This document shows, piece by piece, positions 14,224 through 37,851 of a stretch of DNA of 64,000 nt. The notes beneath the pieces are model-generated. The model was not told where the DNA came from. It did no database searches and saw only the letters and a program-made list of their open reading frames with translations. Origin of the DNA: Ostrea edulis (lineage: Eukaryota); contig NC_079173.1 in assembly GCF_947568905.1 (NCBI RefSeq), forward strand, positions 7,502,001-7,566,000, in the 5' to 3' direction. How positions within the stretch are numbered: position 1 is the first letter of the stretch; every line of letters begins with the position of its first letter. A program made the position numbers and the translations under genes.

Positions 14224-14548
14224 TGTATCTTCAGTGAAGCTCAACCGAAATGTTTGAAATCCGAAATAACAATGCAGTTTTAGAGCTATTATAGGCAAAA
14301 ACAGTGTGCCAAAAAAGTGGAGTCAAATTCGTTGAAGGATAAGAGCTATGATCGAGGGAGATAATCCTTAATTTTGAAATGAATTTCTAAATTTTATAAT
14401 AGCAATTAAATATACATCCGAATTTTCAAGCTAGTAACGAAGTACTTATCTACTGGGCTGTAGAGACCCTCGTGGACTAACAGTCCACCAGCAGAGGCCT
14501 CGACCCAGGGGTCATAATGTAAAACTTATACAGTACCAATTTTGATCA
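14224..14548 (-). mobile_element. Retrozyme-like monomer running from just downstream of one hammerhead to the middle of the next
   Basis: The reverse complement starts gatcaaaattggtactgtataagttttacattatgacccctgggtc and ends ttgagcttcactgaagatac, a truncated hammerhead core. Confidence 0.85.
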
Positions 14549-14785: not shown

Positions 14786-16238
14786 CTTAACAGAAAAAGG
14801 TTTAACAATTTCACTGCATTATTTTCAATGCTTTACAATTTTATCTTTTTAATACTCTAACACGCAGTGAAAACAACACATGAGTTATTCTCACAATATG
14901 CGCTACGTTTATGTCATGGATTGGCGTTTTACAATCTCTGCTACACAATTTGTCATGATTGATTGCACGCAATTTCAAAGCAAACATCCACAGGGAAATC
15001 ACTTCGAACGCGCGTACATACAAAAACACCGACAGTTTGCAGAAACTTCAGATGGGAAAACCTCCACAAATCTCTGAAAATGAACGTAAAAGAGCTATGG
15101 GGATGTTTACTTCGGGATGTCGTAAAAAATGTAGCGCGAGAATCTAATATCCATCCTTCGACTATCAGTCGATTTTTGAGTCGTTTTCGAGTAACAGGAC
15201 AAGTCAGCAATCGTCAACACCATGGTCGTCAACGGAAAACAACGGTTCACCAAGACCGCTTTATTGTTACGACGTCGAGAGGTAACCTCTTCATGTCTGC
15301 ACCCAAAGTCACCGAAGAGTTGCGTCGGGCATCTGGAATAATGATAAGTATTCAGAGTGTGAGGAACAGGTTACTAACTGTTCATCTACGCGCTCGGAGA
15401 CCTCTTATTGCGGTCCCTTTGACTCAACGTCACAGCCAAACTCTCGTTGCCTGGGCAACCACGTATCTGTGCTGGACTCGGCGGAAGTAGAATACAGTTT
15501 TGTTTACTGACGAGTTTGGATTTTGCAGATGGACGCGTTCGTGTTTGGAAAGGACGAAATGAGCGGTTTCATCCCAAAACTTGACCGCTATTGTGATGGG
15601 AGTGTCATGATTTGGGGTGGAATCTGTTATTATGTAAAACATACCTCGTCACAGTAAATGGAACTCAGAATTCACAGCATTATTGTAAAGAAATTGTGGT
15701 TTCTGTAGTTACGCCGTTTTGCACCAGGGTCAAACTACCATATTCCAACAGGGTAACGCTCGACCGCACACCGTGCGACACACCTAAGACGTTATACCGC
15801 AGAACAATATCGACGAACAGGAATGGTCCGCAAGGTCACCTGATTTATCACCAATTGAGCATGTGTGGGACACAATTGATCGACGTGTGAGAGAGCGACG
15901 TGACGTCAACAACGTGGCCCATTTGAGTCGTGCGCGTGAACCCAATAACAATACACGAGCTCTGGAACCTCAACAGAAGGTTGAGACGTCGATTTTTGGC
16001 TGTGGTCGCTGCTGATAGAGGCCATACAAAGTATTGAACGGCATGTCAATTTTCATACCCTACCCCTTTCTTTTTATAACATTTGCTCGTATGAAAAATT
16101 GATTTAGAGATTTGTATAGCATTTATTTATCTCTGGTTAATGAATATATTCATAAATACTAAATATGAATTTCTTATAAATGGTAATGTTGATCATATTA
16201 TATTAGATATTACAAGTTGCTAAACTTTTTTTGTTAAG
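14786..16238 (+). mobile_element. Tc1/mariner DNA transposon, full length but decayed
   Basis: ~26-bp TIRs cttaacagaaaaaggtttaacaatt / aagttgctaaactttttttgttaag, with TA at 14784-14785 and 16239-16240. Confidence 0.9.
15052..16037 (+). pseudogene. Tc1-like transposase pseudogene
   Basis: HTH region (IHPSTISRFLSRFRVTG, GRQRKTT), then VLFTDE, SVMIWGGI, QQGNARPH, SPDLSPIEHVWD and terminal GHTKY*. Several stops and frameshifts. Confidence 0.93.
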
Positions 16239-16885: not shown

Positions 16886-18130
16886 ATTTTGAATTGTTTT
16901 TGAATTATTTGAGAACATTCTTGAAGTTGTCGAAAATACATATAGAGTTAATTGCTCTATGATGAGACACAATTCTGACATTTTCATCACCGGAAGTAGA
17001 TTTGTTTGGAATTATTTGAAAACATTAAATTCATGGATTGAAATAGAACATAGAATATTGCTTCATAGCTTTTTCATTTGGCTGATACTGATATTTCGCT
17101 TATAGTTTTTTATAATGTTCCTTTCAAATATATTTTTGTTCTGAATGGTATTGCAGGTGCATCGGCAAAGGAGCAACAGGGGCGGCGATCGCCGACCCAT
17201 TAATTTGGGGAAAAAATATATAAAAAAGAAAATCTGTTGAACATTTCTCTCTTTTGTATCGCTTATAGGAGTTATGAGATTGATCACTGTTCGTTATCTT
17301 CACCTTTCATCGGGACCACATCTTCTTGGTAGCAAGGTGATATAGTTACTTACAATCTTATAATTACTATTAAGAATATAAAACTTGCGAGTAGGGTAAA
17401 CATTAACCTCAGCATCAATTAAAAGCGAGATCAAGTGCTTCAGAGGAGTAAATATTTCCTGTTGACCAGTCACACCCGTCGTGGGTCATATATCTTCTTC
17501 AGATAAACAAAATACTATGATAATGCGTAATTTGAAAAACGTTTTTGCAACAAATTGCCAATTAACTGTATGAATATATAGGAATTATGAGATTGATCAG
17601 TATTCGTTATTTTCACCTTTCATGAAAGGCATCATACAGCAGTTGTATGACTTGTTGTACTAAAAAATTACTTCTTTTTTTTCATTCTATAACTAATCAC
17701 ATGGATAGAAAATTGTCAATAAGTAGAATTACTTTGGATTGTAACAGATCTTTCAACGATCATGGAAGTGCAGCTCTTTTATAAGTGATTAGTATTTTTT
17801 CCTTGAAATCTGCATGATCTATTGAAGGCAGACTAAGCAGATATGATTCAGACTTTGTTCATATTAATTTTGTTTTATTCTTAGGAAGCACAAACATACA
17901 ATAGGAATTTGTTATCATGCCTTTGCCTTCCATAAGAACCTTTGGAATTCTGAAATGTACGTGGATAAATTTTATTATCAATTTTTAGAACAATGAAGAA
18001 ATGATACATGATCAACAGTAACTTAAACAGAATTAAGATAAGAAGGAAAGAGAAATTTCAGAACCCCAATTTAACATTTCACATCGACTAACACAAGGTA
18101 CTTGTATATCAACTGAAATGAGCCCTTTAC

Positions 18131-18315
18131 CACGATATCGGATGAGATTCCGAGCTTTCCAATTTGGTTGCAGGACCGCGTGCTTCTGTTCTAACACGAT
18201 CGTTTCCCTGGTGATTATCCCCACCACCATTGTGGTGATGACCGACGCCGTCTCTACTAACGACTTCCTTAACATTAGCAACCAAAAAAACGACAACGAG
18301 GAAAATCAAGAATTT
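18131..18315 (-). CDS. Candidate coding exon of a small secreted His/Gly-rich peptide, copy A
   Basis: Acceptor ccatctccttattcttacag| and donor |gtaaag. 185 bp reading KFLIFLVVVFLVANVKEVVS-RDGVGHHHNGGGDNHQGNDRVRTEARGPATKLESSESHPIS. Downstream acceptor at 17949 and AATAAA at 17874-17879. The ATG exon was not located. Confidence 0.55.
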
Positions 18316-18509
18316 CTGTAAGAATAAGGAGATGGTTAAGGTATAAATTTTACAATGAATAATAAGATAAAGATTGAAGTAATCCGATGCTTTTTGTGTG
18401 ACTATCTGGACGCCTAATTTTCTTCAACTTAATAGTTTCCAGCTGTGCTGTATGGACAATAGTCCTTTTGAATAAAATGTTCAGGATTAAAACATTTCGG
18501 GATTTTAGT

Positions 18510-18780
18510 TTCCATGGGGACCCTGGTGAGAACAGGTTCCCAATACCCCTTTGCTTGTCGTAAGAGGCGACTAAATTTGACGGCCCCCCAATTAAGACCT
18601 CAAAGCCAAGACTTGGGTCACAGCAGGTGTGACACGAGAAAGATCTATCCATGTTCAAAGATCGTAATTCCGAACACGAGTCTAATTTTTCAGCCCTTCA
18701 CCGAAAACGTCTCCAGATGAGTGAAAAATATCTCGAGAGGGAGGGTTAAACAATATAAAATCCATCAATCAAGATTTCAG
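18510..18780 (+). mobile_element. SINE-like repeat (gtcgtaagaggcgactaaa family, atca-type tail); paralogs at ~26650-26945 and ~34960-35225
   Basis: GC-rich ~270-bp block with a ctcgagagggagggttaaac...aatcaatcaa tail. The same tail recurs at ~58855-58945 and ~59380-59445. Confidence 0.65.
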
Positions 18781-19325
18781 ATGGAATACTTAGCAACATA
18801 TGCCTGATAAAAGAAAATGATCACCACAACAAGAACATTTAACTAATTCTTTCCATACAAAAGAAGAAATAAGACTAATTTACTCTATACAAATGGATAT
18901 CAGATTATTGTTCACTAGATACATCCGATGTCCAATGTTTTTAACAGATTGGAATAAATATTAATAGTTGACAATGAAATATAAAACAAAAGGGAATGTC
19001 ACAAACTGGATATTAAATACTATACCTTTTTCTTTTATTTCAATTTGCCTAAAAAAGATAATCATAGCGATATAGCAGAAACTCAAAAGAGTTTCTGTAA
19101 GCTTTTTGGTGTCTTGGATCAACAAATCCGTATACTAGTGTATCACCTCAATCCTTCCTTATATAGCAAATGAAACAACTACGTCATGCGGAGATGTGAT
19201 GTGTGTGGATTTGATTCGATGGTGAGAATGTTCATAAGCGCGCGCATTCAATTTTATAAAAATCTTGCAAATATTGAAAATGTATCAATTCCAGAAATAC
19301 TGTAATTGTCTGTTTTAGTTTTCAC

Positions 19326-19327
<2 letters not shown>

Positions 19328-19367
<40 letters not shown>
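19328..19367. repeat. (GA)n microsatellite
   Basis: Direct reading. A second (GA)n lies at 21533-21568. Confidence 0.97.
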
Positions 19368-19370
<3 letters not shown>

Positions 19371-20553
19371 CAATTAGATTCTCAATTTTTCGATACGAAC
19401 TTCGTTTTCTCGGGACAAGGGAAGATGTTTACATCAGATGGCTAAAGATAAACAACAAACACTAGAACACTAGCAGTAAAACTACACTAAATCTGCAAAC
19501 GTATTTACACTGTAAATCACATCTTTTCTAGGGAGGGGCGAATTGGGAATCGTCCTATTCGTCCAGTGGGCTGAACGACAATGCGCGTAATGATATTCTT
19601 TATTAATTTCAGGTAGAACGAGTTAACTAATTAAGTTAATTAGTGCAAAAGTCAACTCGTATCTGTTGATATTACGATGTTAAATAGTACAAAAGTGTAG
19701 AAGAATGCATTCTAAAGTCATAAAGTAAACCATAGTATAGAGCAGGTTCTTTATTATTGTATCTCTTAATAACATATAGAAAACAATTTAAAAAATATAC
19801 TAAGACATTTTCCTACAAATGTCCAATTTCAACAAAGCCGAGAAATAACAAAACAGTTCTTCACAAATAGATAAACGACACTAAAAGAGGACATAAGTAA
19901 ATTGAAATAGGATATGACTTCATAATTGCAAATGAGAAGCAATGAGTCTCAATATAAATCAAGCAGAATATAAACACTGCGCAAATAAAATAAGTTCTAT
20001 GATAAAAAACTTTATAAAGTTGATGGTTTAATTTTGTTTTCATTACAGCACAATATTTTGCTTATTTACAATCACATTTACACTTTCAAAACATTGATTT
20101 GAGATTTACTACATATATGTGTGTCTGGATTATTTTTCATGAGAAAGAAAAGATGTGATTAAATCTCGGAGAGTAGGCAGAGGGTTAACATTAAAAGGAC
20201 ATGCTAAACTTTTAATTTTGTTTAGCATGAAGGTCCTGGGACTTCCCTTTCCAGAAAGAAAAACCAGTTAGAGATACAACAAATGTTTAGAAAGAGACGT
20301 CGCATTATAAATATTTATATAAATATGGACTTTTTGCACAGTATCACGTCTTAGATTTAATATATGCAAGTATATTAAAATATTGCGTTATCGCATTATC
20401 TATAAACATGACGGAATAAAATGCCTGCATTAGAATGACAATGTTCTCCATCAAGGAAGCAAAATCTGATGTCATATTTATGATGTTCATTATCAAACTG
20501 TACAGTCAACCTGAGATTTCTAGGGTGATAACAATCTGCGGAGTTTCACATAC

Positions 20554-20842
20554 AGCCCAGTAGATAAGTACTTCGTTACTAGCTTGAAAATACGGATGTA
20601 TATTCAATTGCTGTTATAAAATTTAGAAATTCATTCCAAAATTAAGGATTATCTCCCTCATGCATAGCTCTTATCTTGGACGAATTTGGCTCCACTTTTT
20701 TGGCACGCTGTTTTGGGCTATATTTAGCTCCACAACTTCATAGTTATTTCGGATTTCAAACATTTCGGTTGAGCATCACTGAAGAGACATTCTTTGTCGA
20801 AATGCCCATCTGGCACATCAAAATTGGTACCGTATAAGTTTT
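20554..20842 (+). mobile_element. Retrozyme-like insertion present only in unit A; hammerhead at 20773-20816 is degenerate
   Basis: TSD ACATAC at 20548-20553 and 20843-20848. Empty sites in unit B (~28850) and unit C (~37140). Stem III is mutated to ATGCCCAT and the stem I 3' strand to TGGCAC. Confidence 0.88.
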
Positions 20843-21529
20843 ACATACATGTGTCTTTATCATCTGAATCGCATTCTTAAAATTTTCAATACTTATCTAA
20901 CCACCTCCTCTTGTTATAGCTGGACATGCTGTATGATCGTTAAATATGATGAGATTCTAAAAATATCTACACTGTCATTTACATATTATGTTTTCATGAA
21001 CACTATGCAGAAGATACTAAAGTTTATTAGATGTAAATACATGTCTTAAATTATATTGTTTTATAAAAATATCGATGTACATTGTAGCATTATTTCGTCG
21101 ATTATACTGTTATGTTCCGTTGAAGAACTTCCCACTCATATTGAGATGGTCACCACTTGCGGGTGAATTGCCACAGAAAGTCATAGCACACTTCCTCACC
21201 TATTGGCAAACTCGACGATTTAAAGGAAAATCACCGATTTCATATATTAGACTCATATGACATTTAAATGCATTTCCAAGTTTCCTTCCAAGAATAGTGT
21301 CTGTTCAATATCTGAGAAGCATTTGACAGTAAGTACAAACGTAAGCTTGAGACAGTGATTACACTTAGAGAGTGTATGTCCCTTATTGATTTATGGTATG
21401 TAAAAGTATGGATGTGCCATTGCTAGATTAATACTGATTTTACTATGATTGAACTTTCCTTACACAATGCTGAACACAATATGTTCATAAGGATGCCATG
21501 TTTCAGGTATATAATGTGATGGTTTATTT

Positions 21530-21569
<40 letters not shown>

Positions 21570-24519
21570 GGGGTCATGTTTTAAAAAAAACAACTTATAG
21601 AGACACTATAGCTCAATTTCCACATTTTAGTCAAGTGTTTTTGTAAATCATGTGTGGATAAAATAATGGAAATCATATCAATACCGACAATTTGAAACAA
21701 TTTCAATGCATCAATTTCCTCTTAACTGCACTTTGAAGATCATTCGAAAACAATGCTGAGTTGGACTTTAAAATGCTTTTTTACATCACGTGAATTTGAA
21801 TGACAGCAGAGGTGTGTGTAGAAAATAATTTGAATACCCGTTGTGGGGTCCAAACTCAAATTTCAAGTATGAAATTACCCCATGCTCCTTATAAGTAAGT
21901 AATTATAAAGGATGTTTTAACAGAAACCATTATATGTTCGTATTGACCAATGTTTATAAACCAATACGTGACGTGTTGATTATAAAAGTAGCACTTGATT
22001 TTAAAGCAGTGTATTTGTTAGTCCCAGTAGCAGATTAAGAAAGGACCCTCCATTTCATGAATACAAATCGTGATCGAAATTCCAGATATGGCACCCAAAC
22101 TGCTGAGTACCTTGGCTAAAACTTAACTTCCAAATACACCCCTTTCGTAAATCCTTGATCCGTCACTGAGTCCTGCTTGCGGTTCTCCTAGCTCTTGGTT
22201 TTGCAACGTTAATTCTGATACCAGCATAAAATTATATATCACATATGAATTTATCTCATTACATCTTACCGCTTTTTGCAGAATCTCATTCTGTCAAAAT
22301 TCTGGCTCTATCCAGTACCCACCACGGGTTCGCTCACTTGGTCAATGGTCAGCATGCTGCACTGTTTACCGTTTACACCCATATTTATCAAAGGAGGCGC
22401 AATATTGTTTTTTATAGGTCACAAGAAGTATTAATATTTGCGTTAAAACAAGAAGTTTCAACGTGGGATAATTGTTATAATTGCAAAGTTCATGTATTCA
22501 ACTATGCAACAAAATTTAACAAAGCTATGGCAAAATTGTTATTTTATGATTTTTGAGCAATAGGAGCTAACGTTTTCCTTTAAGTATAAATAGATGACAT
22601 TTTGCTGTCAAAATGTTTATAAAGATTTATAAAACCATTTTGTAATGGCAGTTGCTATGTGATTTTGGATATAGTTCATTTCCGATCTAATGGACATAAA
22701 ATAGAGGATATATTGTGTTTTCACATTCAGAGAATTTTGTATAATCTAGTCTACAGTCGTATATAAATCGAAGGATTTAAAACGAATTTGAGTATTTGTA
22801 AATGATAAACTACACTTGTAAGTTCTGTATATAGCTTTACTGTAACGATTCTGGAGTTAGAAATTAGTGTAGTACTTTAACATGCACAATGTTGTCAACA
22901 GTTATAATGTAATATTGGTCAGATATAACTTGAAAGATGTACACCGTTAATGATGCCGTTGTTGAAGATAAAGACTTAATTCTATTATTAACCATTAAGG
23001 GATTTATTGGTTCTTTCAGTTTGTCACTTTTAGAAGTGAATTTAATTCCAAGTTTGTTGAATGAATTTTAAGTCATAATGGTAAATAATCAATAATTCCA
23101 AAGTTTAGACTGCTGCAACGTCTCCTCTAAATCCACCACTGATTTATATTGATGTATGTTAAGGAACCCATACATTATACTTATATTAATATGTGCATTT
23201 CATATGATTTCATCACCGTATACATTTTACAAAGTTTTTGCTTTTTTATGTTCATAGGTTGGAAGCTGTATTAAGGTTTTCGTCTTTTTAAGACATTTGT
23301 TGCATGAATCAGTTTTAACCCATTCATAAATCTGGTAATTACGTTGATATATAATCTGTATTAGTGTATTTCAGTCACGTTCAACTAATTGTAGTTCGGT
23401 TTTACTCAGGGTATCTTATAAAAAGAAATATGTTTTTTCACCATTCTTGGTTTAGTCTCTTCTTGTCACCTCAAAAAAATTATGATATCAAAAATTGATA
23501 AAATTGTCAATTTGAAAAAGAATTCAAAATCAGAAAAGGGAAAACACGATCCCATAAAAATTAGAAGGTGTTTAGGAGCTGAGAAAGAGTGGGAATACCC
23601 TGTTGGACTGTGACACCTGATATGAAACGTATATCTTCATCATGTTAACTTGGCAATCATTACTTAAGAGCAATGTGTAAAAAAGGGTCTAATATAGGTA
23701 TAAAACTTCTGTCAATGAGAGGCTGCATTTGCAAATTAGACCTCATCACAACTTTGGTATATCGAGGATCTGCTTTTTGCCTCTCTTTTATTTTTTTTAT
23801 ACTGTATGAGACTTATGCGATTGATTACTTTTCGCTATCATCATTTGTTGATCGGTGGAACGACAATAGACTTCGGTAATCAATAATGCGTAGAACATAC
23901 CCTCATCGATTGAATCGGTTGAGAGACAAAACAACATACACAAGTAGTAATGCATTTGTTTTCTTTTTTGTTTGTTATTGCAAAATCTTTGCTAAGTTTT
24001 CTAGAGTTCGTACATGTATGAGACTCGAAACATATATCCTTCGAATTTCGATAAGCCTAACTATGAACAAAGTGTCCAGTTATTACTAATTATTAATGAT
24101 GCAGAGTAGTGGTGACAAAGGAAAACCGAAAGGAGTGATACATAGAAGTATTAGAACCTCCCCACTAAACCCCTTTCTCCTCTCTCACCCCCTCCTGTCC
24201 CTACTTCCCCTTATCTCCCCCTCCTTCTCACCCTAGCCGATCCTCATAGATACATGTTCGCATTATTTTATATAGTTATAGCCCTCGATAGTCAATGTTA
24301 TTTGTTTAATAAAGAATTGATCCATTCCATTGTGACAACAATAGCTGTAAGTCAAGTACAACTAATCTTTGATGATGGTTACAACTTTGGGACACCTTAA
24401 TTATGGCTATTTATCATACCAACATCTGTCAAGAAACAGGACATCGATTTAATAAGCTCTTATTTCGTACTATAAGCGACACTCAACTCTGAAGGCCTAG
24501 TAAAAAAGTCATTTACTAT

Positions 24520-24905
24520 TTTGACGTATTGAAATATAGATATATAGACGATGTTTTATTTCTTAAGAAAAATCATTCGCATGCATATGTCGATTCGATA
24601 TTACTTTTTGAACTCGAAATAAAAGAAACCATAGAGTCCTACACATATGCTTCGTACTTAGATATTTTATTACAAAATAAATAGCAACGACAGACTAGCA
24701 CCTCAACTTCATGACAAATGGGATGGTTTCAGTTTCTCAGTCGTCAACTTCAAATATCTATGTAGTTATACTTCATTATTACTTGAATGCCTTGCTTATA
24801 TCTCTCTATCGATTTGATATGCAAGAGCTTGTTCTGTTTCTACATCGAGGCAGGGTAGTGACAAATACATTGGTGTTACAGGGGTTCCAACATTCTGATT
24901 TATAG
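24520..24905 (+). pseudogene. Older PLE RT fragment including the catalytic YIDD motif; paralog at ~32810-33190
   Basis: Reads KYRYIDDVLF...ELEIKETIES...ASYLDILL...QLHDKWDGFSFSVVNF, with frameshifts. Confidence 0.8.
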
Positions 24906-25427
24906 TCACTGCAAATGTCAAAATAAAAACGCTTTCAATCATTCAAAATGAAAGAAAGATCACTCTTATTTTATTAAACAACAAAGGTTGGAATCAAAGA
25001 ACAAAAAAATTGATAACCTGGTTATAGACTTGAAGATAGTGGCTTCTTCGGATCATCTGTCACTAGGTCAAATGGTTGAAAAATAAATGTCCGAGGAACC
25101 GGGTATAGTTCGATCACCTTTACGTCTTGTACGTAGTCAAGAGGACTTCTCCTATCCCAAAAATCTTTCCCGATGAAATTGTATCCTCGCTAAGTCGTGT
25201 GAAACTACTTGATCACAATATAGGGCTCACAGCGGGTGTGACCGATCGAAAGGGACTTCAAGGTACCTGATCTAACGTCTGGTGTGTCCAGTAGCCGTGT
25301 TTGTCCAACTCCCTCTTTTGTATCGCTTATAGGAGTTATGAGATTGGTCACTCTTCTTTATCTTCACCTCTCTTTCCAACCATATCTTCTTGGTCGGAAG
25401 GTGATATGGTTACTTACAATGCAAAGT

Positions 25428-25645
25428 GAAGATAACGAGCAGTGATCAATCTCATAACTCCAATAAGAGATACAGAATAGATAGCTGGGCAAACATGGAC
25501 CCCTGGACACACCAGAGGTGTGATCAGGTGCCTAGGAGGAGTAAGCATCCCCTGTTGACCGGTCACACCCGCCGTGAGCCCTATATCCTGATCAGGTAAA
25601 CGGAGTTATCCGCAGTGAAAATCAGTGTGCAATGAACGGCTTACA
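25428..25645 (-). mobile_element. PLE 3' UTR insertion shared by unit B and unit C (33716-33940), absent from unit A
   Basis: Unit A reads ttacttacaatcttataatt without interruption at ~17347-17366. Confidence 0.85.
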
Positions 25646-26268
25646 ACCTTAAAATTACTATAAAAAATGCAAAACTTGCGAGTAGGTTAAACATGGGCCC
25701 TAGCATAAATTAAAAGCGAGATCAGGTGCCTCGGAGGAGTAAACATTTCCTGTTGTCTAGTCACACCCGTCGTTGGTCATATATCTTCCTCAGATAAACA
25801 AAATACTATAAAAAGCAAATTACTTCGCTACTGATCACATCGATAGAAAGCTGTCAATGAGTACATTTACTTTGGATTGTAACACATGTTTCAACGATCT
25901 TGGAAGTGCAGCTCTTTTATAAAGTATTAATGTCTCTTCCTTGAAATCGGCAAACTTTAAGGAGCGCAGACTAAGCAGAAATGATTCAGACTTTGTTCAT
26001 ATTAATTTTGTTTTATTCCTAGGAAGCACAAACATACAATAGGAATTTGTCATCATGCCTTTGCCTTCCATGAGAACCTTTGGAATTCTGAAATATACAT
26101 GGATCAATTTTATTATCAATATTTAGAACAATGAAGAAATGATACATGATCAACAGTAACTTAAACAGAATTAAGATAAGAAGGAAAGAGAAATTTCCGA
26201 ACCCCAATTTAACATTTCAAATCGCCTAACACAAGGTACATGTATATGAACTGAAATGAGATCTTTAC

Positions 26269-26453
26269 CACGATTAGTGATGAGATTCCGAGCTTTCCAA
26301 TTTGGTTGCGGGACCGCGTGATTCTGCTCCAACACGATCGTTTTCCTGGTGATTCTCCCCACCACCATTGTGGTGATGACCGACGCCGTCTCTACTAACG
26401 ACTTCCTTAACATTAGCAACCAAGAAAACGACAACGAGGAAAATCAAGAATTT
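26269..26453 (-). CDS. Candidate secreted His/Gly-rich peptide exon, copy B
   Basis: Same 185-bp length and splice sites. Reads ...RDGVGHHHNGGGENHQENDRVGAESRGPATKLESSESHH*, with the stop two codons early. Confidence 0.5.
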
Positions 26454-27483
26454 CTGTAAGAATAAGGAGATGGTTAAGCTATAAATTTTACAATGAATAA
26501 TAAGATAAATATTGAAGTAATGCAATGCTTTTCGTGTGACTATCTGGACTCCTAATTTCCTTCAACTTAATAGATTCCCAGCTGTGTTGTATGGACAATA
26601 GTCCTATTGAATAACATTTTCAGGATTAAAACATTTCGGGATTTTAGTTTCCATGGGGACCCTGGTTAGAACTGGTCCTCAGTACCCCCTTGCTTGTCGT
26701 AAGAGGCGACTAAATTCGACGGCCCTTCATATAAGACCTCAAAACCAAGGCTCTTGTCGCAGAAGGTGCGGTATGATAAAGATCTATCCATGTTCAAAGA
26801 CCGTAAGTGCCGAGCATAAGTCAAATTTTTCAGCCATTAACCGAAAACGTCTCCAGATGAGTGAAAATATCTCGAGAGGGAGGGTTAAACAAGTGAAAAT
26901 ATCTCGAGAGGGAGGGTTAAACAAAATAAAATCAATCAATGAAGATTTCAGATGAAATACTTAGCAACATATGCCTGATAAAAGAAATAATCACCACAAG
27001 AACATTTAACTAATTCTTTCCATACAAAAGAGGAAATAGACTAGTTTACTCTATACAAATGGATATCAGATTATTGTCCACTAGATACATATGATGTCCA
27101 GTTTTTTAACCGATTGGAATAAATATTAATCGTTGACAATGCAATATAAAACAAAAGGGAATGTCACAAACTGGATATTAAATACTATATTTTTTTCTTT
27201 TATTTCAATTTGCCTTAAAAAAGATAATCATAGCGATATAGCATAAAATCAAAAGAGTCTTCCCATTTTCTGTAAGCTTTTTGGTGTCTTGGATCAACAA
27301 ATCCGTATACTAGTGTGTTACCCGAATCCTTCCTTATATAGCAAATGAAACAACTACGTCATGTGGAGATGCGATGTGTGTGGATTTGATTCGATGTTGA
27401 GAATAATCATAAGTGCGCGCATTCAATTTTATAAAAATCTATCAAATATTGAAAATGTATCAATACCAGAAATACTATAATTG

Positions 27484-27671
27484 NNNNNNNNNNNNNNNNN
27501 NNNNNNNNNNNNNNNNNNNNNNNNNNNNNNNNNNNNNNNNNNNNNNNNNNNNNNNNNNNNNNNNNNNNNNNNNNNNNNNNNNNNNNNNNNNNNNNNNNNN
27601 NNNNNNNNNNNNNNNNNNNNNNNNNNNNNNNNNNNNNNNNNNNNNNNNNNNNNNNNNNNNNNNNNNNNNNN
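27484..27671. other. Assembly gap (N run); a second gap lies at 35764-35970
   Basis: N characters. Both gaps fall where unit A has its (GA)n tract. Confidence 0.99.
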
Positions 27672-30600
27672 TTCTCAATTTTTCAATACGAACTTCGTTT
27701 TTTCGGGACAAGGGAAGATGTTTACATAACATGGCTGAAGATAAACAAGAAACACTAGCAGTAAAGCTACACCAAATCTGCAAACGTATTTACACTGTAA
27801 GTCACATCTTTTCTAGGGAGCGACGAATTGGGAATCGTCCTATTCGTCCAATGGACTGAACGACAATGTGCGATGTGTTCATGATATTCTTTGTAATTTC
27901 AGGTAGGACGAGTTAACTAATTAAGTTAATTAGTGCAAAAGTCAACATGTATCTGTTGAGATTACGATGCTAAATAGTACAAAAGTGTAGAAAAATGTAC
28001 TCTAAAGTAATAAAGTAAACCATAGTATAAAATAGGTTCTTTATTATTGTATCTCTTAATAACATGTAGAAAACATTTTTTTTAAATCCATCAACTAAGC
28101 TATTTCCCTGCACATGTACAATTTCAACAAAGCCGAGAAATAGGAATACAGTTCTTCACAGGTAGAGGGGCGACACTAAAAGAGGACATAACTAAATTGA
28201 AATAGGATATGACTTCATAACTGCAAATGACAAGCAATGGGTCTCAGTAGAAATCAAGCAGAATATAAACACTGCGCAAACACAATAAGTTCTATGTTTA
28301 AAAACTTTATAAAGTTGATGGTTTAATATTGTTTTCATCATAGCACAATATTTTGCTTGTTTACAATCACATTTACACTTTCAAAACATTGATTTGAGAT
28401 TGACTGCATATATGTGTGTCTGGATTATTTTTCATGAGAAAGAAAAGATGTGATAAAATCTCGGAGAGTAGATAAAGGGCTAACACTAAAAGGACATGCT
28501 TAACTTTTAATTTTGTTTAACATGAAGGTCCTGGGAATTCCCTGTCCACAAAAAAAAAACAGTTAGAGATACAACAAATGTTTAGAAAGAGACGCTGCAT
28601 TATGAATATTTCTAAAAATATGGACTTTTTGCACAGAATCACGTCTTAGATTTAATATAGGCAAGTATATTAAAATATTGTGTTATCGCCTTATCTATAA
28701 ACATGAGGGAATAAAATGCCTGCATTAGAATGACAATGTTCTCCATCAAGGAAGCAAAATCTGATTTCATATTTATGATGTTCATTATCAAACTGTACAG
28801 TCAACCTGAGATTTCTAGAATGATAACAATCTGTGGAGTTTTACATACATGTATCTTTATCACATCTGAATCACATTCATAAAATTTTCATTAATTATCA
28901 GATCACCCCCTCTTGTTATAGCTGGACATGCTGTATGATCGTTAAATATGATGACATTTTAAAAATATCTACACTATCATTTACACATTATGTTTTCATG
29001 AACACTATGGAGAAGATACTTAAGTTTATTAGATGTAATTACATGTCTTAAATTATATTGTTTTATAAAAATATCGATGTACTATGTAGGATTATTTAGT
29101 CGACTATACTTTTATGTCCCGTTTAAGAACTTTCCATTCATATTGAGATGGTCACCACTTGCCGATGAATTGACACAGAAAGTCATAGCGCATTTCCTCA
29201 CCATATGGCAGACTCGACAATTTAAAGGGAAACCACCGATTTCATATATTAGACTCATATGACGTTTAAGTGCATTTCCAAGTTTCCTTCCAAGAATAGT
29301 GTCTGTTCAATATCTGAGAAGCATTTGTCAGTAAGTACAGATGTAAGCTTGAGACAGTGATTGCACTTAGAGAGTGTATGTCCCTTATTGATTTTCTGAT
29401 CACATGATCACAGGGCAAGTTGAAGTATGATTTCATACTTACAAACATTTAGTCGCTGAATGATATTTTCTGTACATTGATTTATATATGCAAGGTATGT
29501 AAAGGTATGGACGTGACATTGCAAAATTAATATTGATTTTACTATGATTGAACTTTCCTTACACAAATCTGAACACAAAATGTGTATATGGATGACAGGT
29601 CTCAGGTATATACATTGTAATGTGGTTGTTTATTTATTTAGAAAGAGAGAGCAAGAGAGAAAAAGAGGGATATATAGTGAGAGAAAGAAAGAGATAAAGA
29701 GACAGACAGAGAGAGAGAGACATATAGAGGGGGTCATTGTTTTTGGGTTGTTTTTTTTAAAAAACACTTATAGAGACAATATAGCTCAATTTCCACATTT
29801 TAGTCAAGTGTTTTTGTAAATCATGTGTGGATAAAATGATAAAAATCATATCAATACTGACAATTTGAAACAACTTCAATGCACAAATTTGCTCTTAACT
29901 GCACTTTGAAGATTATTCGAAAAACAAAGGTTTCTTCTTGCTGAGTTGGATTTTAAAATGCTTATTTACATCACGTGAATTTGAATGACAGGAGAGGTGT
30001 GTATAGAAAATAATTTGAATATCCCTTGTGGGGTCCAAACTCAAATTTCAAGTATGAAATTACCCAATGCTCCTTATAAGTAAGTACTTATAAAAGGATT
30101 TTTCAAAATAAATCCTTATATGTTCGTATTGACCAATGTTTATAAACGAACACGTGACGTGTTAATTAAAAAAGTAGCACTTGATTTTAAAGCAGTGTAT
30201 TCGCTAGTCCCAGTAGCAGATTTAGAAGGGACCCTCCATTTCATGACCACAAATTGTGAGCAAAATTCCAGATATGGCACCCAAAATGCTGAGTACCTTG
30301 GCTAAAACTCAACTTCCACGTACACCCCTTTCGTAAATCCTTAATCCGTCACTGAATCCAGCTTGCCCTTCAACTAGATCTTGGTTTTCCAACGGTAATT
30401 CTGATACCAACATAAAATTATAGCTCACATATGAGTTTTATCTCATTACATCTGACTGCTTTTTGCAGAATCTCATTCTGTCAAAAGTCTGGCTCTATCC
30501 AGTACCCACTACACTTTCTCTCACTCAGTCAATGGCCAGCATGCTGCACTGTTTACCATTTATGCCCATATTTATCAAAGGAGGCCCAATATTGTTTTCT

Positions 30601-33600
30601 ACAGTTCACAAAAAGTATTAATATTTGCATTAAAACAAAAAGTCTCAACTTGGGATAATTGTTATAAATGCAAAGTTCATGTATTCAACTATGCAACACA
30701 ATTTAAGAAAGCTATGACAAATTGTTATTTCATGATTTATGTGTAATAGGAGCTAAAGTTTTTCTTTAAGTACATGTATAAACAAATGACATTTTGCCGT
30801 CAAAATGTTTAAAAAGATTTATAAAACCATTTGTTTAATGACAGTTGCTATGTGATTTTGGATATAGTTGATTTCCAATTAATGGATATAAAATAGAGGA
30901 TATATTGTGTTTTCACATTCAGAGAATTTTGTATAATCTAGTCTACAGTCGTATATAAATCGAAGAATTTAAAACGAATTTGTGTATTTGTAAATGATAA
31001 ACTACACTTGTAAGTTCTGTATATAGCTTTACTGTAACGATTCTGGAGTTAGAAATTAGTGTAGTGCTTTAACATGCACAAGGTTTTCAACAGTTAGAAT
31101 GTAATATTGGTCAGATATAACTTGAAAGATGTACACCGTTAATGATGCCCTTGTTGAGAATAAGGACTCAATTTTATTATTAACCACAAAGTCAGGGGTT
31201 TATTGGTTCTTGCAGTTTGTCACTTTGAGAAGTGAATTTAATTCCAAGTTTTTTTAATGAATTTTAAATCATCATGGTAAATAATCAATAATTCCAAAGT
31301 TTAAACTGCTGCACCACCTCCTCTAAATCCACCACTGATTTATATTGATGTGTGTTAAGGAACCCATACATTATGCTTAGATTCATATGTGCATTTCGTA
31401 TGATTTCATCACCGTATAAAAATTACAAATGTGTTGCTTTTTTATGTACATAGGTTGGAAGTTTTATTAAGGTTCTCGTCTTTTTAAGACATTTGTTGCA
31501 TGAATCAGTTTTAACCCATTCATAAATCTGGTAATGACGTAAATTACGTGGATCTGTAATCTGTATTAGTGTATTTCAGTCACGATCAACTATATGTAGT
31601 TCGGTTTTACTCAGGGTTTTCTTATAAAAATAAATGTTTTTTCACCATTATTGGTTTAGTCTCTTCTTGTCACCTCTAAAAAGTTAAGATAACAAAACTT
31701 GCTAAAATTGTCAATTTTAAAAGGAATACAAATTCAGTAAAGGGAAAACACGATCCCATAAAAATTAGGTGGTCAGGTGTAGGGAAAGAGTGGGCATCCC
31801 CTGTTGGCCTGTGACACCTGATATGAAACGTATATCTTTATCATATTAACTAGGCGATCCTTACCCAAGAGCAATATGTAAAGAAGGGTCTAATGTTGGT
31901 ATAAATTTTTTGTCAATGAGAGGCTACATTTGCAAATTAGACCTCATCACAAGTATGGTAGATAGAGGGTCCGGTTTTTTGTTGTTGTTTTTTTTTTTTT
32001 TTTTTTGCCTTTTTAAAATTTTTTTTTATCCTTGATGAGACTTATGCGATTGATTACTGTTCGTTATCATCATTTGTTTATCGGTATAACGACCATAGAA
32101 TTTGCATACTGCTGATTTTATACAAGAGTGTTGAAACCCCCGTAACATGAATGTATTTCTCAGTAGCCTGTATCAGTTCGGTAATCAATAATGCGTAAAA
32201 CATACCCTCATCGATTGAATCGGTTGATAGACAAAACAACATATACAAGTAGTAATGCATTTGTTTTCTTTTTTGTTTGTTATTGCAAAATCTTTACTAA
32301 GTTTTCTAGAGATCGTATCAGACTCGAAACATATATCCTTCCAATTTCGTTAAGCCTAGCTATGAACAAAGTGTCCAGATATTACTAATTATTAATGATG
32401 CAGAGTAGTGGTGAAAAAGGAAAACCGAACGAAGTATTAGAACCTCCTCACTAAACCTCTTTCTCTTCTCCCACCCCTACTGTCCCTACTTTCCCTTATC
32501 TCCCCTCCTTTTCACCCTAGCTGATCCTCATACATACATTTTCGCATTATTTTATATAGTTATAGCCCTCCATAGTCAATCCTCTTTTCTTTAATCAACA
32601 ATTGTTGCATTCCATTGTGACAACAATAGCTGTAAGTGAAGTACAACTAATCTTTGATGATGCTTACAATTTTGGGACGCCTTAATGATGGCTATTTATC
32701 ATATCAACGTCTGTCAAGAAACAGGACATCGATTTAATAGGCTTTTATTTCGTACTATAAGCGATACTCAACTCTGAAGGCTTAGCAACAAACTCATTTC
32801 CTATTTTGACGTATTTAAATATAGATATATATATGATGTTTTATTTTTTAAGAAAAATCATTTGCATGCATATGTCGATTCGATCTTTCCTTTTGAAATC
32901 GAAATAAAAGAAACGATAAAGTCCTACACATATGCTTCGTAATTAGATATTTTACTACAAAATAAATAGCAACCACAGACTAACACCTCAACTTTATGAC
33001 AAATGGGATGATTTCAGTTTCTTTGTCTTCAACTTCCCATATTTATGTAGTTATGTCTCATTATTGTTTGTATACCTTGCTTATATCTCTCTATAAATTT
33101 GATACGCAAGAACATGTTCTGTTTCTACATCGAGGCAGGCTAGTGACAAACAAATTGATGGTACAGAGTTTCCAACACTCTAATTAATAGTCACTACAAA
33201 TTTCAAAATAAAAACTCTTTCAACCATTTTAAAATGAAAGAAAGATAACTTTTATTTAATTATATGACAAAGGTTGGACTCAACGAACAATAAAATTGAT
33301 AACCTGGTTACAAACTTGGAGAGGGTGGCTTCTTCAGTTCATATGTCACTAGGTCAAATAGTTGAAAAATAAATGGTCGAGGAAGAGGGTATAGTTCGAT
33401 CACCTTTACGTCTTGTACGTAGTCAAGAGGATTTATCATATCCCGAAAATCTTTCCGGACGCAATTGTATCCTCGCTAAGTCGTGTGATATTATTTAATC
33501 ACGATATAGGGCTTACAGCGGGTGTGACCGATCGAAAGAGAATGATTTCTCCTCCTAGGTGCCTGATCCAACCTCTGGTGTGTCCAGGGGACGTGCTTGT

Positions 33601-33610
33601 CAAACTCTCT

Positions 33611-36600
33611 CTTTTGTATCGCTTATAGGAGTTATGAGATTGGTCATTGTTCTTTATCTTCACCTCTCTTTCCAACCATATTTTTTTCGTTGCAAGGTGA
33701 TATGGTTACTTACAATGCAAAGTGAAGATAACGAACAGTGATCAATCTCATAACTCCTATAAGAGATACAAAATAGACAGTTGGGAAAACATGGATCCCT
33801 GGACACACCAGAGGTGGGATCATGTGCCATGGAGGAGTAAGCATCCCCTGTTGACCGGTCACACCCGCCGTGAGCCCTATATCCTGATCAGGGAAACGGA
33901 GTTATCCGCAGTCAAAATCAGTGTGCCAAGAACGGCTTACAATCTTATAATTACTATAAAGAATACGAAACTTGCGAGTAGGGTAAACATTGGTTCTAGC
34001 ATAAATTAAAAGCGATATCAGGTGCCTCGAAGGGGTAAGCATTTTCTGTTTTCTAGTCACACCCGTAGTGGGTCATATATCTTCCTCAAATAAACAAAAT
34101 ACTATAATAAACAAATTACTTCGCTTTTTTTCATTCTATAACTGATCACATGGATAGAAAACTGCCAATAAGTAAATTTATTTTGGATTCTAACACATGT
34201 TTCAACGATCTATGAAGTGCAGCTCTTTTATAAGTTATTAATATCTCTTCCGTGAAATCGGCATGCTTTATTGAGTGCAAACTAAGCAGAAATAATTCAG
34301 ACTTTGTTCATATTAATTTTGTTTTATTCTTAGGAAGCACAAACATACAATAGGAATTTGTCATCATGCCTTTTGCCTTCCATAAGAACCTTTGGAATTC
34401 TGAAATATACATGGATCAATTTTATTATCAATTTTTAGAACAATGAAGACATGATACATGATCAACCGTAATTTAAACAGAATTAAGATAAGAAGGAAAG
34501 AGAAATTTCAAACCGCAATTTAACATTTCACATCGACTAACACAAAGTACATGTATATCAACTGAAATGAGATCTTTACCACGATTGATGATGATATTCC
34601 GAGCTTTCCAATTTGGTTGCAGGACCGCGTGCTTCTGCTCCAACACGATCGTTTCCCTGGTGATTATCCCCACCACCATTGTGGTGATGACCGATGCCGT
34701 CTCTACTAACGACTTCCTTAACATTAGCAACCAAAAAAACGACAACGAGGAAAATCAAGAATTTCTGTAAGAATAAGGAGATGGTTAAGGTATAAAATTT
34801 TACAATGAATGATAAGATAAAGATTGATGTAATGCGATGCTTTTCGTGTAACTATCTGAACTCCTAATTTTCTTCAACTTAATAGTTTCCCAGCTGTGCT
34901 GAATGGACAATAGTGTTTTGAATAACATTTTCAGGATGAAAGTATTTCGGGATGTTAGTTTCCATGGGGACCCGGGTTGGAACAGGTCCTCAATACCCCT
35001 TTGCCTTTCGTAAGAGGCGACTAAATTTGACGGCCCTTCATATAAGACCTCAAAACCAAGGTCCGTGTCAGAGCAGGTGTGGTACGATAAAGATATATCC
35101 ATGTTCAAAGGCCATAAGATCCGACCATCAGTCTAATTTTTCAGCCATTCAACGAAAACGTCTCCAGATGACTGAAAAATATCTCGAGAGGGAGGGTTAA
35201 CAATATAGAATCCATCAATCAAGATTTCAGATGGAATACTTAGCAACATATGCCTGATAAAAGAAAATGATCACCACAACAAGAACATTTAACTAATTTT
35301 TTCCATACAAAAGAGGAAATAAGACTAGTTTACTCTATACAAATGGATATCAGATTATTGTTCACTAGATACAGCTGATGTCCAATGTTTTTAACCGATT
35401 GGAATAAATGTTAATAGTTGAGAATGCAATATAAAACAAAAGGGAATGTCACAAACTGCATATTAAAAACTATACTTTTTTTATTTCAATTTGCCTCAAA
35501 AAAATAATCATAGCGATATAGCAGAAAATCAAATGAGTCTTACAATTTTCTGTAAGCTTTTTGGTGTCTTGGATCAACAAATCCGTATACTAGTGTGTTA
35601 CCAGAATCCTTCCTTATATAGCAAATGTAACAACTACGTCATGCGGAGATGCGATGTGTGTGGATTTGATTTGATGTTGAGAATGTTCATAAGCGCGTGC
35701 ATTCAATATCATAAAATTCTAGCAAATATTGAAAATGTATCAATACCAGAAATACTGTAATTCNNNNNNNNNNNNNNNNNNNNNNNNNNNNNNNNNNNNN
35801 NNNNNNNNNNNNNNNNNNNNNNNNNNNNNNNNNNNNNNNNNNNNNNNNNNNNNNNNNNNNNNNNNNNNNNNNNNNNNNNNNNNNNNNNNNNNNNNNNNNN
35901 NNNNNNNNNNNNNNNNNNNNNNNNNNNNNNNNNNNNNNNNNNNNNNNNNNNNNNNNNNNNNNNNNNNNNNNATACGAACTTCATTTTCTCGGGACAAGGG
36001 AAGATGTTTACATAAGATGGCTAAAGATAAACAAGAAACACTAGCAGTAAAATTACACTAAATCTGCAAACGTATTTACACTGTAAATCACATCTTTTCT
36101 AGGGAGGGGCGAATTGGGAATCGTCCTATTCGTCCAATGGGCTGAACGACAATGTGCGATGTCTTCATGATATTCTTTATTAATTTCAGGTAGGACGAGT
36201 TAACTAATTAAGTTAATTAGTGCAAAAGTCAACATGTATCTGTTGAGATTACGATGTTAAACGGAAATAGTAAAAAAGTGTAGAAGAATGTACTCTAAAG
36301 TCGTAAAGTAAACCATAGTATAAAATAGGTTCTTTATCATTGCATCTCTTAATAACATGTAAAAAATTTTTTAAAAAAAACCATTTACTTAGATATTTTC
36401 CTTCACATGTACAATTTCAACAAAGCCGAGAAATAGGAATACAGTTCTTCACAGGTAGAGAAACGACACTAAAAGAGGATATAACTAACTTGAAATAGGA
36501 TGTGATTTCATAATTGCAAATGACAAGCAATAGGTCTCAATAGAAATCACGCAGAATATACACACTGCGCAAATACAATAAGTTCTATGTTAAAATACTT

Positions 36601-37282
36601 TATAAAGTTGATGGTTTAATTTTGTTTTCATTATAGCACAATATTTTGCTTGTTTACAATCACATTTACACTTTCAAAACATTGATTTGAGATTGACTAC
36701 ATATATGTGTGTCTGGATTATTTTTCATGAGAAAGAAAAGATGTGATAAAATATCGGAGAGTAGACAGAGGGCTAACAATAAAAGGACATGCTAAGATTT
36801 TTATTTTATTTAACATGAAGGTCCTGGGAATTCCCTGTCCAGAAAAAAAAAGACCAGTTAGAGATACAACAAATGTTTAGAAAGAGACGCCGCATTATCA
36901 ATATTTCTAAAGGTATGGACTTTTTGCACAGTATCACGTCTTAGATTTAATATATGCAAGTATATTAAAATATTGTTTTATCGCATTATCTATGAACATG
37001 ACGGAATAGAATGTCTGCATTAGAATGACAATGTTCTCCATCAAGGAAGCAAAATCTGATGTCATATTTATGATGTACATTAGCAAACTGTACAGTCAAC
37101 CTGAGATTTCTAGGATGATAACAATCTGCGGAGTTTCACATACATGTATCTTTATGATATGAATCACATTCTTAAAATATTCATTAATTATCAGTTCACC
37201 CCCTCTTGTTATAGCTGGACATGATGTATAATCGTTAAATATGATGAAATTTTAAACATATCTACACTGCATTTACATATTA
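33611..37282. repeat. Tandem segmental duplication, unit C (partial; ends at a PLE insertion)
   Basis: Colinear with the first ~3.7 kb of units A and B. Contains an N-gap at 35764-35970. Confidence 0.9.
34580..34764 (-). CDS. Candidate secreted His/Gly-rich peptide exon, copy C
   Basis: Same 185-bp length and splice sites. Reads ...RDGIGHHHNGGGDNHQGNDRVGAEARGPATKLESSEYHHQS. Confidence 0.55.
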
Positions 37283-37851
37283 TTGAAATTAGACATTAAC
37301 GGCAAACTGACAACTCAACTGTATGACAAACGGGATGATTTCAGCTTCTCCATCGTCAACTTCCCACATTTTTGTAGCAATATTCCATTATCACCTGCAT
37401 ATGGTGTTTATATATCTCAACTGATTCGATATGCAAGAGCTTGTTCTGGGTATAGTCAGTTTTTAAATCGAGGTAAACTACTGACAAACAAGTTGATGGT
37501 ACAGGGATTTCAACAGTCTCGACTGAAGTCAGCATTTCGCAAATTCTATGGTCGTTATAACGATCTAGTTCGTCAATACGACCTCGCATTGGGTCAAATG
37601 CTGTCTGACGTGTTTCATACCGATTGTTAAGCCGTTCTTGGCACACTAATTTGACTGCGGATAACTCCGTTTACCTGATGAGGATATCGGGCTCACGGCG
37701 GGTTTAACCGTTCAACAGGGGATGCTTACTCCACCTAGGCACCTGATCCCACCTCTGGTGTGTCCAGGGCTCCGTGTTTGCCCAACTATCTATTTTGCAT
37801 TGCTTGTAGGAGTTATGAGATTGATCACTGTTCGTTATCTTCACCTTGCAT
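37283..37851 (+). mobile_element. PLE 3' fragment with an open 115-aa RT-thumb segment
   Basis: LDINGKLTTQLYDKRDDFSFSIVNFPHFCSNIPLSPAYGVYISQLIRYARACS...HTDC* followed by the family 3' UTR. Confidence 0.9.

What the first reader, a model, noticed from the sequence alone, without database searches (positions are those of the whole stretch)
17874..34764. Tandemly triplicated candidate gene for an unrecognised secreted His/Gly-rich peptide
Seen: all three units keep a 185-bp minus-strand exon with a strong acceptor and a GTAAAG donor. It reads a hydrophobic signal-like stretch (KFLIFLVVVFLVANVKEVVS) followed by ~40 polar residues starting RDG(V/I)GHHHNGGG. Splicing to the next acceptor (17949 in unit A) makes TG|A, a stop across the junction, followed by AATAAA. 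That model tolerates the early stop in B and the 1-bp insertion in C's last exon. Inference: a lineage-specific small secreted peptide family (metal-binding, immune, mucus or shell-matrix roles are all speculative). I recognise no homolog, the ATG exon is unlocated (weak candidates near 29202-29204 and 19731), and substitutions among copies are mostly non-synonymous.
Basis: partly seen in the sequence, partly recalled or inferred. Interest (0 to 1): 0.72.

Follow-up and report, generated by a model that had tools for sequence, protein, structure and literature searches.

The report
Disabled triplicate of orphan peptide gene
The three repeated units each carry a copy of a real but undescribed, oyster-restricted gene for a ~60-residue secreted peptide, yet all three copies here have lost their start codon or first splice site. 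They are probably dead copies; intact relatives lie elsewhere in the genome.

Summary
Three ~8.3-kb tandem units each carry the 185-nt minus-strand exon. Neither assembly gap touches an exon; both replace a (GA)n microsatellite 144 nt upstream of a TATA box.

Four more copies lie elsewhere in the genome: D (same chromosome, 10.7 Mb away), E and F (another chromosome), and G (a third). Comparing all seven revealed the missing first exon. It has a conserved ATGACGTAGTTG element, a TATA box and about 65 nt of leader, and it ends exactly in ATG|GTAAG. The precursor therefore starts M-K/R followed by a hydrophobic core.

The family looks real:
- Only this reading frame is open in all seven copies.
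- Indels are in frame.
- In the E/F pair, exon 2 differs at 1 of 182 sites against 70 of 593 in introns (p = 8e-8).

In the window, however, copy A has a 9-bp deletion of ATG plus donor, B has donor GT>GG, and C has ATG>ATT. Their exon 2 evolves at nearly the intron rate. B's "early stop" is the ancestral TAA, so no stop needs to form across a splice junction. The His run is specific to the A-D subfamily.

No homologue or annotation was found among 1.84 billion protein representatives. Function is unknown; the products are predicted to be acidic and disordered.

The parts
17658..25829 (.). Tandem unit A (about 8.2 kb). It carries a private ~290-nt mobile-element insertion at 20555-20846.
   Evidence: Self-BLAST; repeats.
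25830..34104 (.). Tandem unit B (about 8.3 kb).
34105..37283 (.). Tandem unit C, truncated at 37283 by a dispersed repeat (37311-37859 matches 7019-7568).
19157..19187 (-). Copy A core promoter: ATGACGTAGTTG element (19176-19187) and TATA box TATATAAGG (19157-19165).
   Evidence: Conserved in all copies on three chromosomes.
19089..19101 (-). Copy A, end of exon 1. A 9-bp deletion removes the ATG and the GTAAG donor.
   Evidence: Alignment with B, C, D, D2, D4, E and F.
18131..18315 (-). Copy A exon 2 (185 nt): the rest of the signal peptide plus the polar peptide. If unspliced, the frame ends at TAA 18127-18129.
17874..17949 (-). Copy A putative exon 3 (3' UTR only), running to AATAAA at 17874-17879. 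The putative 3' intron is 17950-18130.
   Evidence: Donor, acceptor and AATAAA are conserved in all seven copies. Splicing is not shown.
27332..27362 (-). Copy B core promoter: ATGACGTAGTTG at 27351-27362 and TATA at 27332-27340.
27262..27266 (-). Copy B: ATG (27264-27266) is kept, but the donor dinucleotide reads GG (27262-27263) instead of GT.
26269..26453 (-). Copy B exon 2, with the ancestral TAA stop at 26274-26276.
26012..26087 (-). Copy B putative exon 3, to AATAAA at 26012-26017.
35612..35642 (-). Copy C core promoter: ATGACGTAGTTG at 35631-35642 and TATA at 35612-35620.
35542..35546 (-). Copy C: the start codon is mutated to ATT (35544-35546). The donor GT (35542-35543) is intact.
34580..34764 (-). 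Copy C exon 2. If unspliced, the frame ends at TAA 34576-34578.
34323..34399 (-). Copy C putative exon 3, to AATAAA at 34323-34328. It has a 1-nt insertion relative to A and B.
27484..27671 (.). Assembly gap in unit B, at the position of the (GA)n microsatellite, 144 nt upstream of the TATA box and outside all exons.
35764..35971 (.). Assembly gap in unit C at the same microsatellite position.

Best explanation
The 8.3-kb unit carries one small RNA polymerase II gene of a taxon-restricted family with seven exon-2 loci on three chromosomes of this genome.

Architecture (shown by comparing the copies):
- an ATGACGTAGTTG element and a TATA box;
- about 65 nt of leader;
- exon 1 ending exactly in the ATG, followed by GTAAG;
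- intron 1 of 0.44-2.2 kb;
- exon 2 of 182-185 nt, which holds all the rest of the coding sequence;
- a TAA stop, then a conserved TCGTG|GTAAA;
- a probable 166-328-nt intron in the 3' UTR;
- a short last exon with AATAAA.

Inferred product: a 59-63-residue precursor. It has M-K/R, a 14-residue hydrophobic core, and small residues at -3/-1 (VVS|, VTG|, VDG|). Signal peptidase would cleave it in the ER to release a ~38-42-residue, cysteine-free, disordered, acidic Gly/Asn/Asp(/His)-rich peptide. This peptide most likely acts outside the cell by binding cations or surfaces. Possible settings are shell matrix, mucus or immunity; these are speculative.

The three copies in the window are probably non-functional as coding genes. 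Each has a different private lesion in the five bases ATG+GT that end exon 1, and their exon 2 drifts at close to the intron rate. Intact members are D (C10:18.27 Mb), E and F (C5:76.95-76.96 Mb) and G (C6:9.96 Mb).
For: - Copies and coordinates.
- Exon 1 and the promoter were found by footprinting. They are conserved across three subfamilies, while intron 1 is at the level of shuffled controls.
- Frame 0 is the only frame open in all seven copies, and the indels are multiples of three.
- E versus F: exon 2 differs at 1/182 sites, exon 1 at 1/74, introns at 70/593. Fisher p = 8e-8.
- The stop codon plus donor motif is conserved in B, E, F and G.
- Lesions are private to A, B and C, while D, D2 and D4 are intact.
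- Each copy has about 44 private events per 1406 aligned nt. That gives P of about 0.14-0.15 per copy for a hit in ATGGT.
- Among A/B/C, exon 2 diverges 4.3-5.9% against 7.8-8.2% for introns, which is not significant. dN/dS among A-C is 0.46-3.2.
- The AlphaFold model shows a helix at residues 2-22 and the rest at pLDDT about 50.
- The h-region has mean hydropathy of about 3, there is no Cys, and net charge at pH 7.5 is -1.4 to -5.5.
Against: - There is no transcript evidence of any kind.
- No annotated or transcript-derived protein of the family exists in the protein collections. The only hits are unspliced genomic contigs.
- dN/dS between subfamilies is high, at 0.5-0.9.
- Exon identity in E/F could reflect local gene conversion rather than selection.
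- Three independent hits on the same 5 nt are unlikely under pure drift (about 0.003, a post hoc estimate). This hints that something other than simple decay is going on.
- The lesions could not be checked in other individuals.
- Signal-peptide cleavage was judged by eye. No SignalP was available.
Confidence: 0.6

Rival explanations
1. One reading: the three window copies are working genes for a secreted His/Gly-rich peptide. They would use another, undetected 5' exon, a near-cognate start (AUU in copy C sits in a good context, A at -3 and G at +4), or an intact ATG that the assembly misreports.
For: - TATA box, exon-2 acceptor, exon-2 open frame, downstream donor and acceptor, and AATAAA are all intact in A, B and C.
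- Exon 2 is slightly less diverged than the introns.
- Three hits confined to ATG+GT are unexpected for random decay.
Against: - Three different lesions remove the only conserved start or donor.
- There is no in-frame ATG in exon 2 or in its upstream in-frame extension.
- In A, the nearest downstream ATG with a GT donor is out of phase (my reading).
- Exon 2 versus intron divergence is not significant among A/B/C, unlike E/F.
Confidence: 0.2
2. The family is transcribed but non-coding (a spliced lncRNA), and the open frame is incidental.
For: - No protein of the family is annotated anywhere.
- dN/dS is high.
- The product is predicted to be disordered and low in complexity.
- The signal-coding part is conserved even at synonymous sites.
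Against: - One frame stays open through about 58 codons in three subfamilies that are only 32-46% identical in protein. Indels are in frame and the stop position is conserved.
- Exon 1 ends exactly in ATG, in phase with exon 2, in every intact copy.
- The N-terminus has the canonical layout of a signal peptide.
Confidence: 0.12
3. This is a chance ORF inside repeated or mobile DNA, and there is no gene at all.
For: The units are full of transposon fragments, and the window copies show no clear excess of exon conservation.
Against: - Only the promoter/exon 1, exon 2 and the 3' part are alignable between chromosomes. The rest of the unit is not.
- There are just seven copies, not a dispersed repeat.
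- E/F exon constraint has p = 8e-8.
Confidence: 0.05

Closest known systems
Taxon-restricted bivalve secreted-peptide gene families with a conserved signal and a fast-evolving mature part, such as mussel myticalins, mytilins and myticins and oyster defensins or proline-rich peptides (from my own knowledge, not tested here)
   Same: - A small precursor with a signal-peptide region that is better conserved than the mature part, even at synonymous sites.
- Tandem and segmental duplication with pseudogenised copies.
- Divergent alleles: a G allele carries four charge-changing replacements.
   Different: The known families are cationic and/or cysteine-rich. This family is acidic and has no cysteine. 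There is no sequence similarity.
Frog skin active peptide precursors (Pfam PF03032, FSAP_sig_propep)
   Same: A short precursor with a conserved signal followed by an acidic stretch. It was the only named small-peptide cluster among the weak language-model look-alikes (score 0.76).
   Different: There is no Pfam match and no dibasic processing site in any member. The Atlas score is below the level that means anything. The resemblance is in layout only.
His/Gly-rich antimicrobial peptides such as shepherins, histatins, clavanins and alloferon (my own knowledge)
   Same: The A-D subfamily has a GHHHNGGG stretch and a C-terminal HH.
   Different: The predicted peptides are net negative. The His run is absent from E, F and G. 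No homology was found.
Acidic, intrinsically disordered molluscan shell-matrix proteins, Asp- or Gly-rich (my own knowledge)
   Same: Secreted, acidic, Asp/Asn/Gly-rich and predicted disordered.
   Different: The product is much smaller (about 40 residues) and has no repeats. There is no evidence of mantle expression or of presence in shell.
Unprocessed (duplicated) pseudogenes
   Same: Copies A-C keep their introns and promoter, carry disabling lesions, and evolve at near-neutral rates.
   Different: All three lesions fall in the same five bases, while every other signal stays intact.

Membership tests
Classical secretory precursor (cleavable N-terminal signal peptide) | Met followed by a basic n-region and a 7-15-residue hydrophobic h-region | tested here: met
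   M|K or M|R is followed by 14 hydrophobic residues with mean Kyte-Doolittle hydropathy of 2.9-3.1. The AlphaFold model shows a helix at residues 2-22. The Met comes from the inferred exon 1.
Classical secretory precursor (cleavable N-terminal signal peptide) | A c-region with small residues at -3/-1 and a predicted cleavage site | tested here: inconclusive
   VVS|R, VTG|D and VDG|Q fall in the same alignment column. They were judged by the -3/-1 rule only; no SignalP was available.
Classical secretory precursor (cleavable N-terminal signal peptide) | The protein is actually secreted | not testable with these tools
   This needs expression or peptidomics.
His/Gly-rich antimicrobial peptides | Net positive charge of the mature peptide | tested here: not met
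   Charge at pH 7.5 is -1.4 to -5.5.
His/Gly-rich antimicrobial peptides | His richness kept across the family | tested here: not met
   There are 5-6 His in A-D but only 1 in E, F and G.
Frog skin active peptide precursors (PF03032) | Match to the Pfam model | tested here: not met
   No Pfam families matched any of the seven members at E <= 10.
Cysteine-rich bivalve defence peptides (defensins, mytilins, myticins, big defensins) | A conserved cysteine array | tested here: not met
   No cysteine after the signal in any member, and no Pfam hit.
Duplicated (unprocessed) pseudogene, applied to copies A, B and C | A disabling lesion relative to intact paralogues | tested here: met
   A has a 9-bp deletion of ATG plus donor, B has donor GT>GG, and C has ATG>ATT. 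D, D2, D4, E, F and G are intact.
Duplicated (unprocessed) pseudogene, applied to copies A, B and C | Relaxed constraint on the coding sequence | tested here: met
   Among A/B/C, exon 2 diverges 4.3-5.9% against 7.8-8.2% for introns (p = 0.09-0.45). In E/F the figures are 0.5% against 11.8%. The power is low because the exon is only 185 nt.
Duplicated (unprocessed) pseudogene, applied to copies A, B and C | No translated product | not testable with these tools

The most novel reading that the evidence does not exclude
The three tandem copies were not lost by drift. Each was silenced independently at the same five bases (ATG plus the GT donor), while the promoter, open frame, splice sites and poly(A) signal stayed intact. 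That would mean repeated selection against translating this secreted peptide from the array. Examples are a costly or pathogen-exploited product, or the copies being kept as regulatory RNAs or as a reservoir for gene conversion with the intact copy D.
Probability: 0.12. Interest if true: 0.55.

Novelty: new member of a known kind. Interest (0 to 1): 0.3.

Why it matters
If confirmed, this adds an unannotated, species- or genus-restricted family of small acidic secreted peptides to the oyster gene set. Such genes are routinely missed by annotation pipelines and often turn out to act in immunity, mucus or shell formation. The practical lesson for this window is narrower. The eye-catching triplication is most likely three dead copies, so work on function should target the intact paralogues D, E, F and G. 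The coincidence of three different knock-outs at the same start/donor site is a small evolutionary curiosity, and population data could test it.

Tried and rejected
- **Joined spliced model.** Exons were searched by reference only.
- **Homology searches**, all without a relative:
  - Word searches with A, G and E found nothing beyond the genome's own unspliced contigs.
  - The profile search of 1.84 billion representatives found only P0001 and P0002. These are exon 2 of G and E on genomic contigs.
  - Pfam found nothing.
  - PDB sequences found nothing.
  - The ESM Atlas gave no score above 0.78.
  - A literature search for His/Gly-rich oyster peptides found nothing relevant.
  - A literature search for the run accessions found no paper.
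Rejected in favour of the conserved exon 1.
- **Alternative frame.** An 87-90-aa ORF in frame +1 over exon 2 is rejected because that frame has stops in every copy.
- **Stop/donor motif search.** This gave one extra hit, on C7, which has no upstream homology and is at the chance level.
- **Rfam.** No family hit at the gathering threshold in 16000-38500.
Full report
**Observation**

The region is a tandem array of an ~8.2-8.3-kb unit. Unit A runs from about 17658 to 25829, B from 25830 to 34104, and C from 34105 to 37283. C is cut short by a dispersed repeat. The units are 89-92% identical.

Each has a TTACAG acceptor and a GTAAAG donor. Each encodes a hydrophobic stretch followed by a polar His/Gly-rich stretch.

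**The gaps, tested first**

The gaps at 27484-27671 and 35764-35971 both replace the stretch that in unit A is 19309-19378, which includes a (GA)20 microsatellite. Sequence on both sides is collinear with A and with an outside copy. The gaps lie 144 nt upstream of what turned out to be the TATA boxes of copies B and C. They are outside all exons, so no reading frame crosses them. I did not fill them.

**More copies elsewhere**

A DNA search and then a profile search of the window's own genome found further exon-2 copies:
- D lies on the same chromosome, 10.7 Mb away, and is 94% identical.
- E and F lie head to head on another chromosome and are about 70% identical in DNA and 46% in protein.
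- G lies on a third chromosome, is 32% identical in protein, and matched the profile at E = 9e-4.
- A 49-nt fragment also turned up.

The genome is 895 Mb in 52 contigs. Earlier notes of this scan call it the European flat oyster; I did not test that.

**Finding the first exon**

Between the A-D group and E/F, only three blocks of the unit align: about 165 nt lying 0.4-0.8 kb upstream of exon 2, exon 2 itself, and the ~400 nt after it.

The upstream block contains a conserved ATGACGTAGTTG element and a TATA box (GCTATATAAGG). About 65 nt further on it reads ...CAGAAAATG|GTAAGA. G has the same arrangement 2.2 kb upstream of its exon 2.

Exon 1 therefore ends exactly with the ATG. Exon 2 starts in phase 0 with K or R, so the precursor begins M-K/R followed by 14 hydrophobic residues. 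Across subfamilies the promoter, leader, exon 2 and last exon are conserved well above shuffled controls. Intron 1 is at control level.

Gene dimensions:

| Part | Length |
|---|---|
| Intron 1 | 441-2241 nt |
| Exon 2 | 182-185 nt |
| Second intron-like interval | 166-328 nt |
| Last exon, up to AATAAA | 58-71 nt |

**Is it coding?**

- Frame 0 is the only frame open in all seven copies. The other frames have 1-7 stops.
- The length differences between subfamilies are in-frame.
- The young E/F pair differs at 1 of 182 sites in exon 2 and 1 of 74 in exon 1, against 70 of 593 in the introns. Fisher p = 8e-8. This shows purifying selection, or less likely very local gene conversion, on exactly the two exons that matter.
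- dN/dS between subfamilies is 0.5-0.9. The signal-coding part is conserved even at synonymous sites, as is usual for fast-evolving secreted peptides.

**The stop codon**

B, E, F and G share a TAA at the same position. It is followed by a conserved TCGTG|GTAAA. A, C and D have lost that TAA and run two or three codons further to TGG-TAA or TAG.

B's 'early stop' is therefore the ancestral stop.

The conserved donor, a conserved acceptor (slightly shifted in G) and a conserved AATAAA make a short intron in the 3' UTR plausible. I put that at roughly 60%, and nothing here proves it. In D this interval holds a 135-nt insertion.

**The window copies are disabled**

In the five bases ATG+GT that end exon 1:
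- A has a 9-bp deletion that removes both.
- B keeps the ATG but reads GG for the donor.
- C reads ATT for the ATG.

Each change is private to its copy. D and two further exon-1 copies near it (D2, D4) are intact there, as are E, F and G. There is no other in-frame ATG in exon 2 or in its upstream extension.

Among A, B and C, exon 2 diverges by 4.3-5.9% against 7.8-8.2% for the introns. This is not significant. dN/dS among them scatters around 1.

All other signals are intact in A-C: the TATA box, both acceptors, the second donor, the open frame and AATAAA. With about 44 private events per 1406 aligned nt, a hit in ATGGT has P of about 0.14-0.15 per copy. The chance of a hit in all three is therefore about 0.003 (a post hoc estimate). 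I cannot explain this pattern, and I list it as the novel case.

**Product**

The precursors are 59-63 residues long. By eye they have a basic n-region, a hydrophobic core and small residues at -3/-1 in the same alignment column (VVS|R, VTG|D, VDG|Q). The AlphaFold model gives a helix at residues 2-22 and pLDDT of about 50 for the rest.

The predicted peptides are 38-42 residues long and cysteine-free, with 7-9 Gly. Net charge at pH 7.5 is -1.4 to -5.5. The His cluster exists only in A-D; E, F and G are Asp/Asn/Gly-rich. There are no dibasic processing sites.

My best guess at a mechanism is a secreted, disordered acidic peptide that binds cations or mineral or microbial surfaces. This is inference from composition only.

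**Relatives and annotation**

No relative was found in any of these searches:
- Pfam;
- PDB sequences;
- word searches with A, G and E;
- the ESM Atlas, where no score exceeded 0.78.

A profile search of 1.84 billion representatives returned only two proteins. They are exon 2 of G and of E, as called on short contigs. Those contigs are collinear with the genome, introns included, and 98-99.6% identical to it. They are therefore genomic reads of the same species, not transcripts.

No annotated or transcript-derived protein of the family is on record. One divergent G allele differs at four exon-2 sites, all amino-acid and charge-changing.

**What is missing**

**Verdict**

The exon is real and belongs to an undescribed orphan secreted-peptide gene family. 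The triplicated copies in this window are most likely start-less pseudogenes. The His/Gly character and the junction stop are not features of the family. I rate this of modest interest.

Noticed in passing
window 20555-20846: A ~290-nt element is present only in unit A. It is absent at the matching point of B (near 28849) and C (near 37144). It is 94% identical to 3277-3548, with further copies at 14217-14462 and 62422-62694. It was therefore inserted after the units duplicated. Other notes call this element a hammerhead-bearing mobile RNA element. Rfam at the gathering threshold gave no hit in 16000-38500.
   Followed up: partly
G000:C10:18260000-18297400 (L009, L011, L044, L035-L039): There is a second, inverted and rearranged array of the same unit 10.7 Mb away. 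It holds the intact copy D and a 49-nt exon-2 fragment on the opposite strand. It also holds three more promoter/exon-1 copies. Two of them (18279239-424 on the + strand and 18286966-7151 on the - strand) are 100% identical, face each other across 7.4 kb of unrelated DNA, and lack exon 2.
   Followed up: partly
L045, L046 versus L020 (G000:C6:9959451-9959635): A divergent allele of paralogue G was seen in two other individuals. It differs at four exon-2 sites, all non-synonymous and charge-changing (Q>R, N>K, Q>R, N>D), at the start of the predicted mature peptide. One of the two carries a further R>M.
   Followed up: partly
window 166-4114 and 14963-15490: A LINE-type retrotransposon remnant with an endonuclease ORF (PF03372) and a reverse-transcriptase ORF (PF00078), and a Tc1/mariner-type transposase N-terminus (PF01498) just upstream of the array.
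   Followed up: partly
window 37283-37860, 7019-7568, 12057-12430, 61870-62202: A dispersed repeat, 90-96% identical between copies, truncates unit C. Fragments of it also lie inside each unit, at 25419-25646 and 33715-33944. Its 115-aa ORF has no Pfam match.
   Followed up: no
window 19176-19187, 27351-27362, 35631-35642, and the same element in D, F and G: A conserved ATGACGTAGTTG element, with a CRE/ATF-like TGACGTA core, sits about 20 nt upstream of the TATA box in members on three chromosomes. In E it is mutated to AACATAGTTG. It is a candidate bZIP-factor site that controls the family.
   Followed up: no
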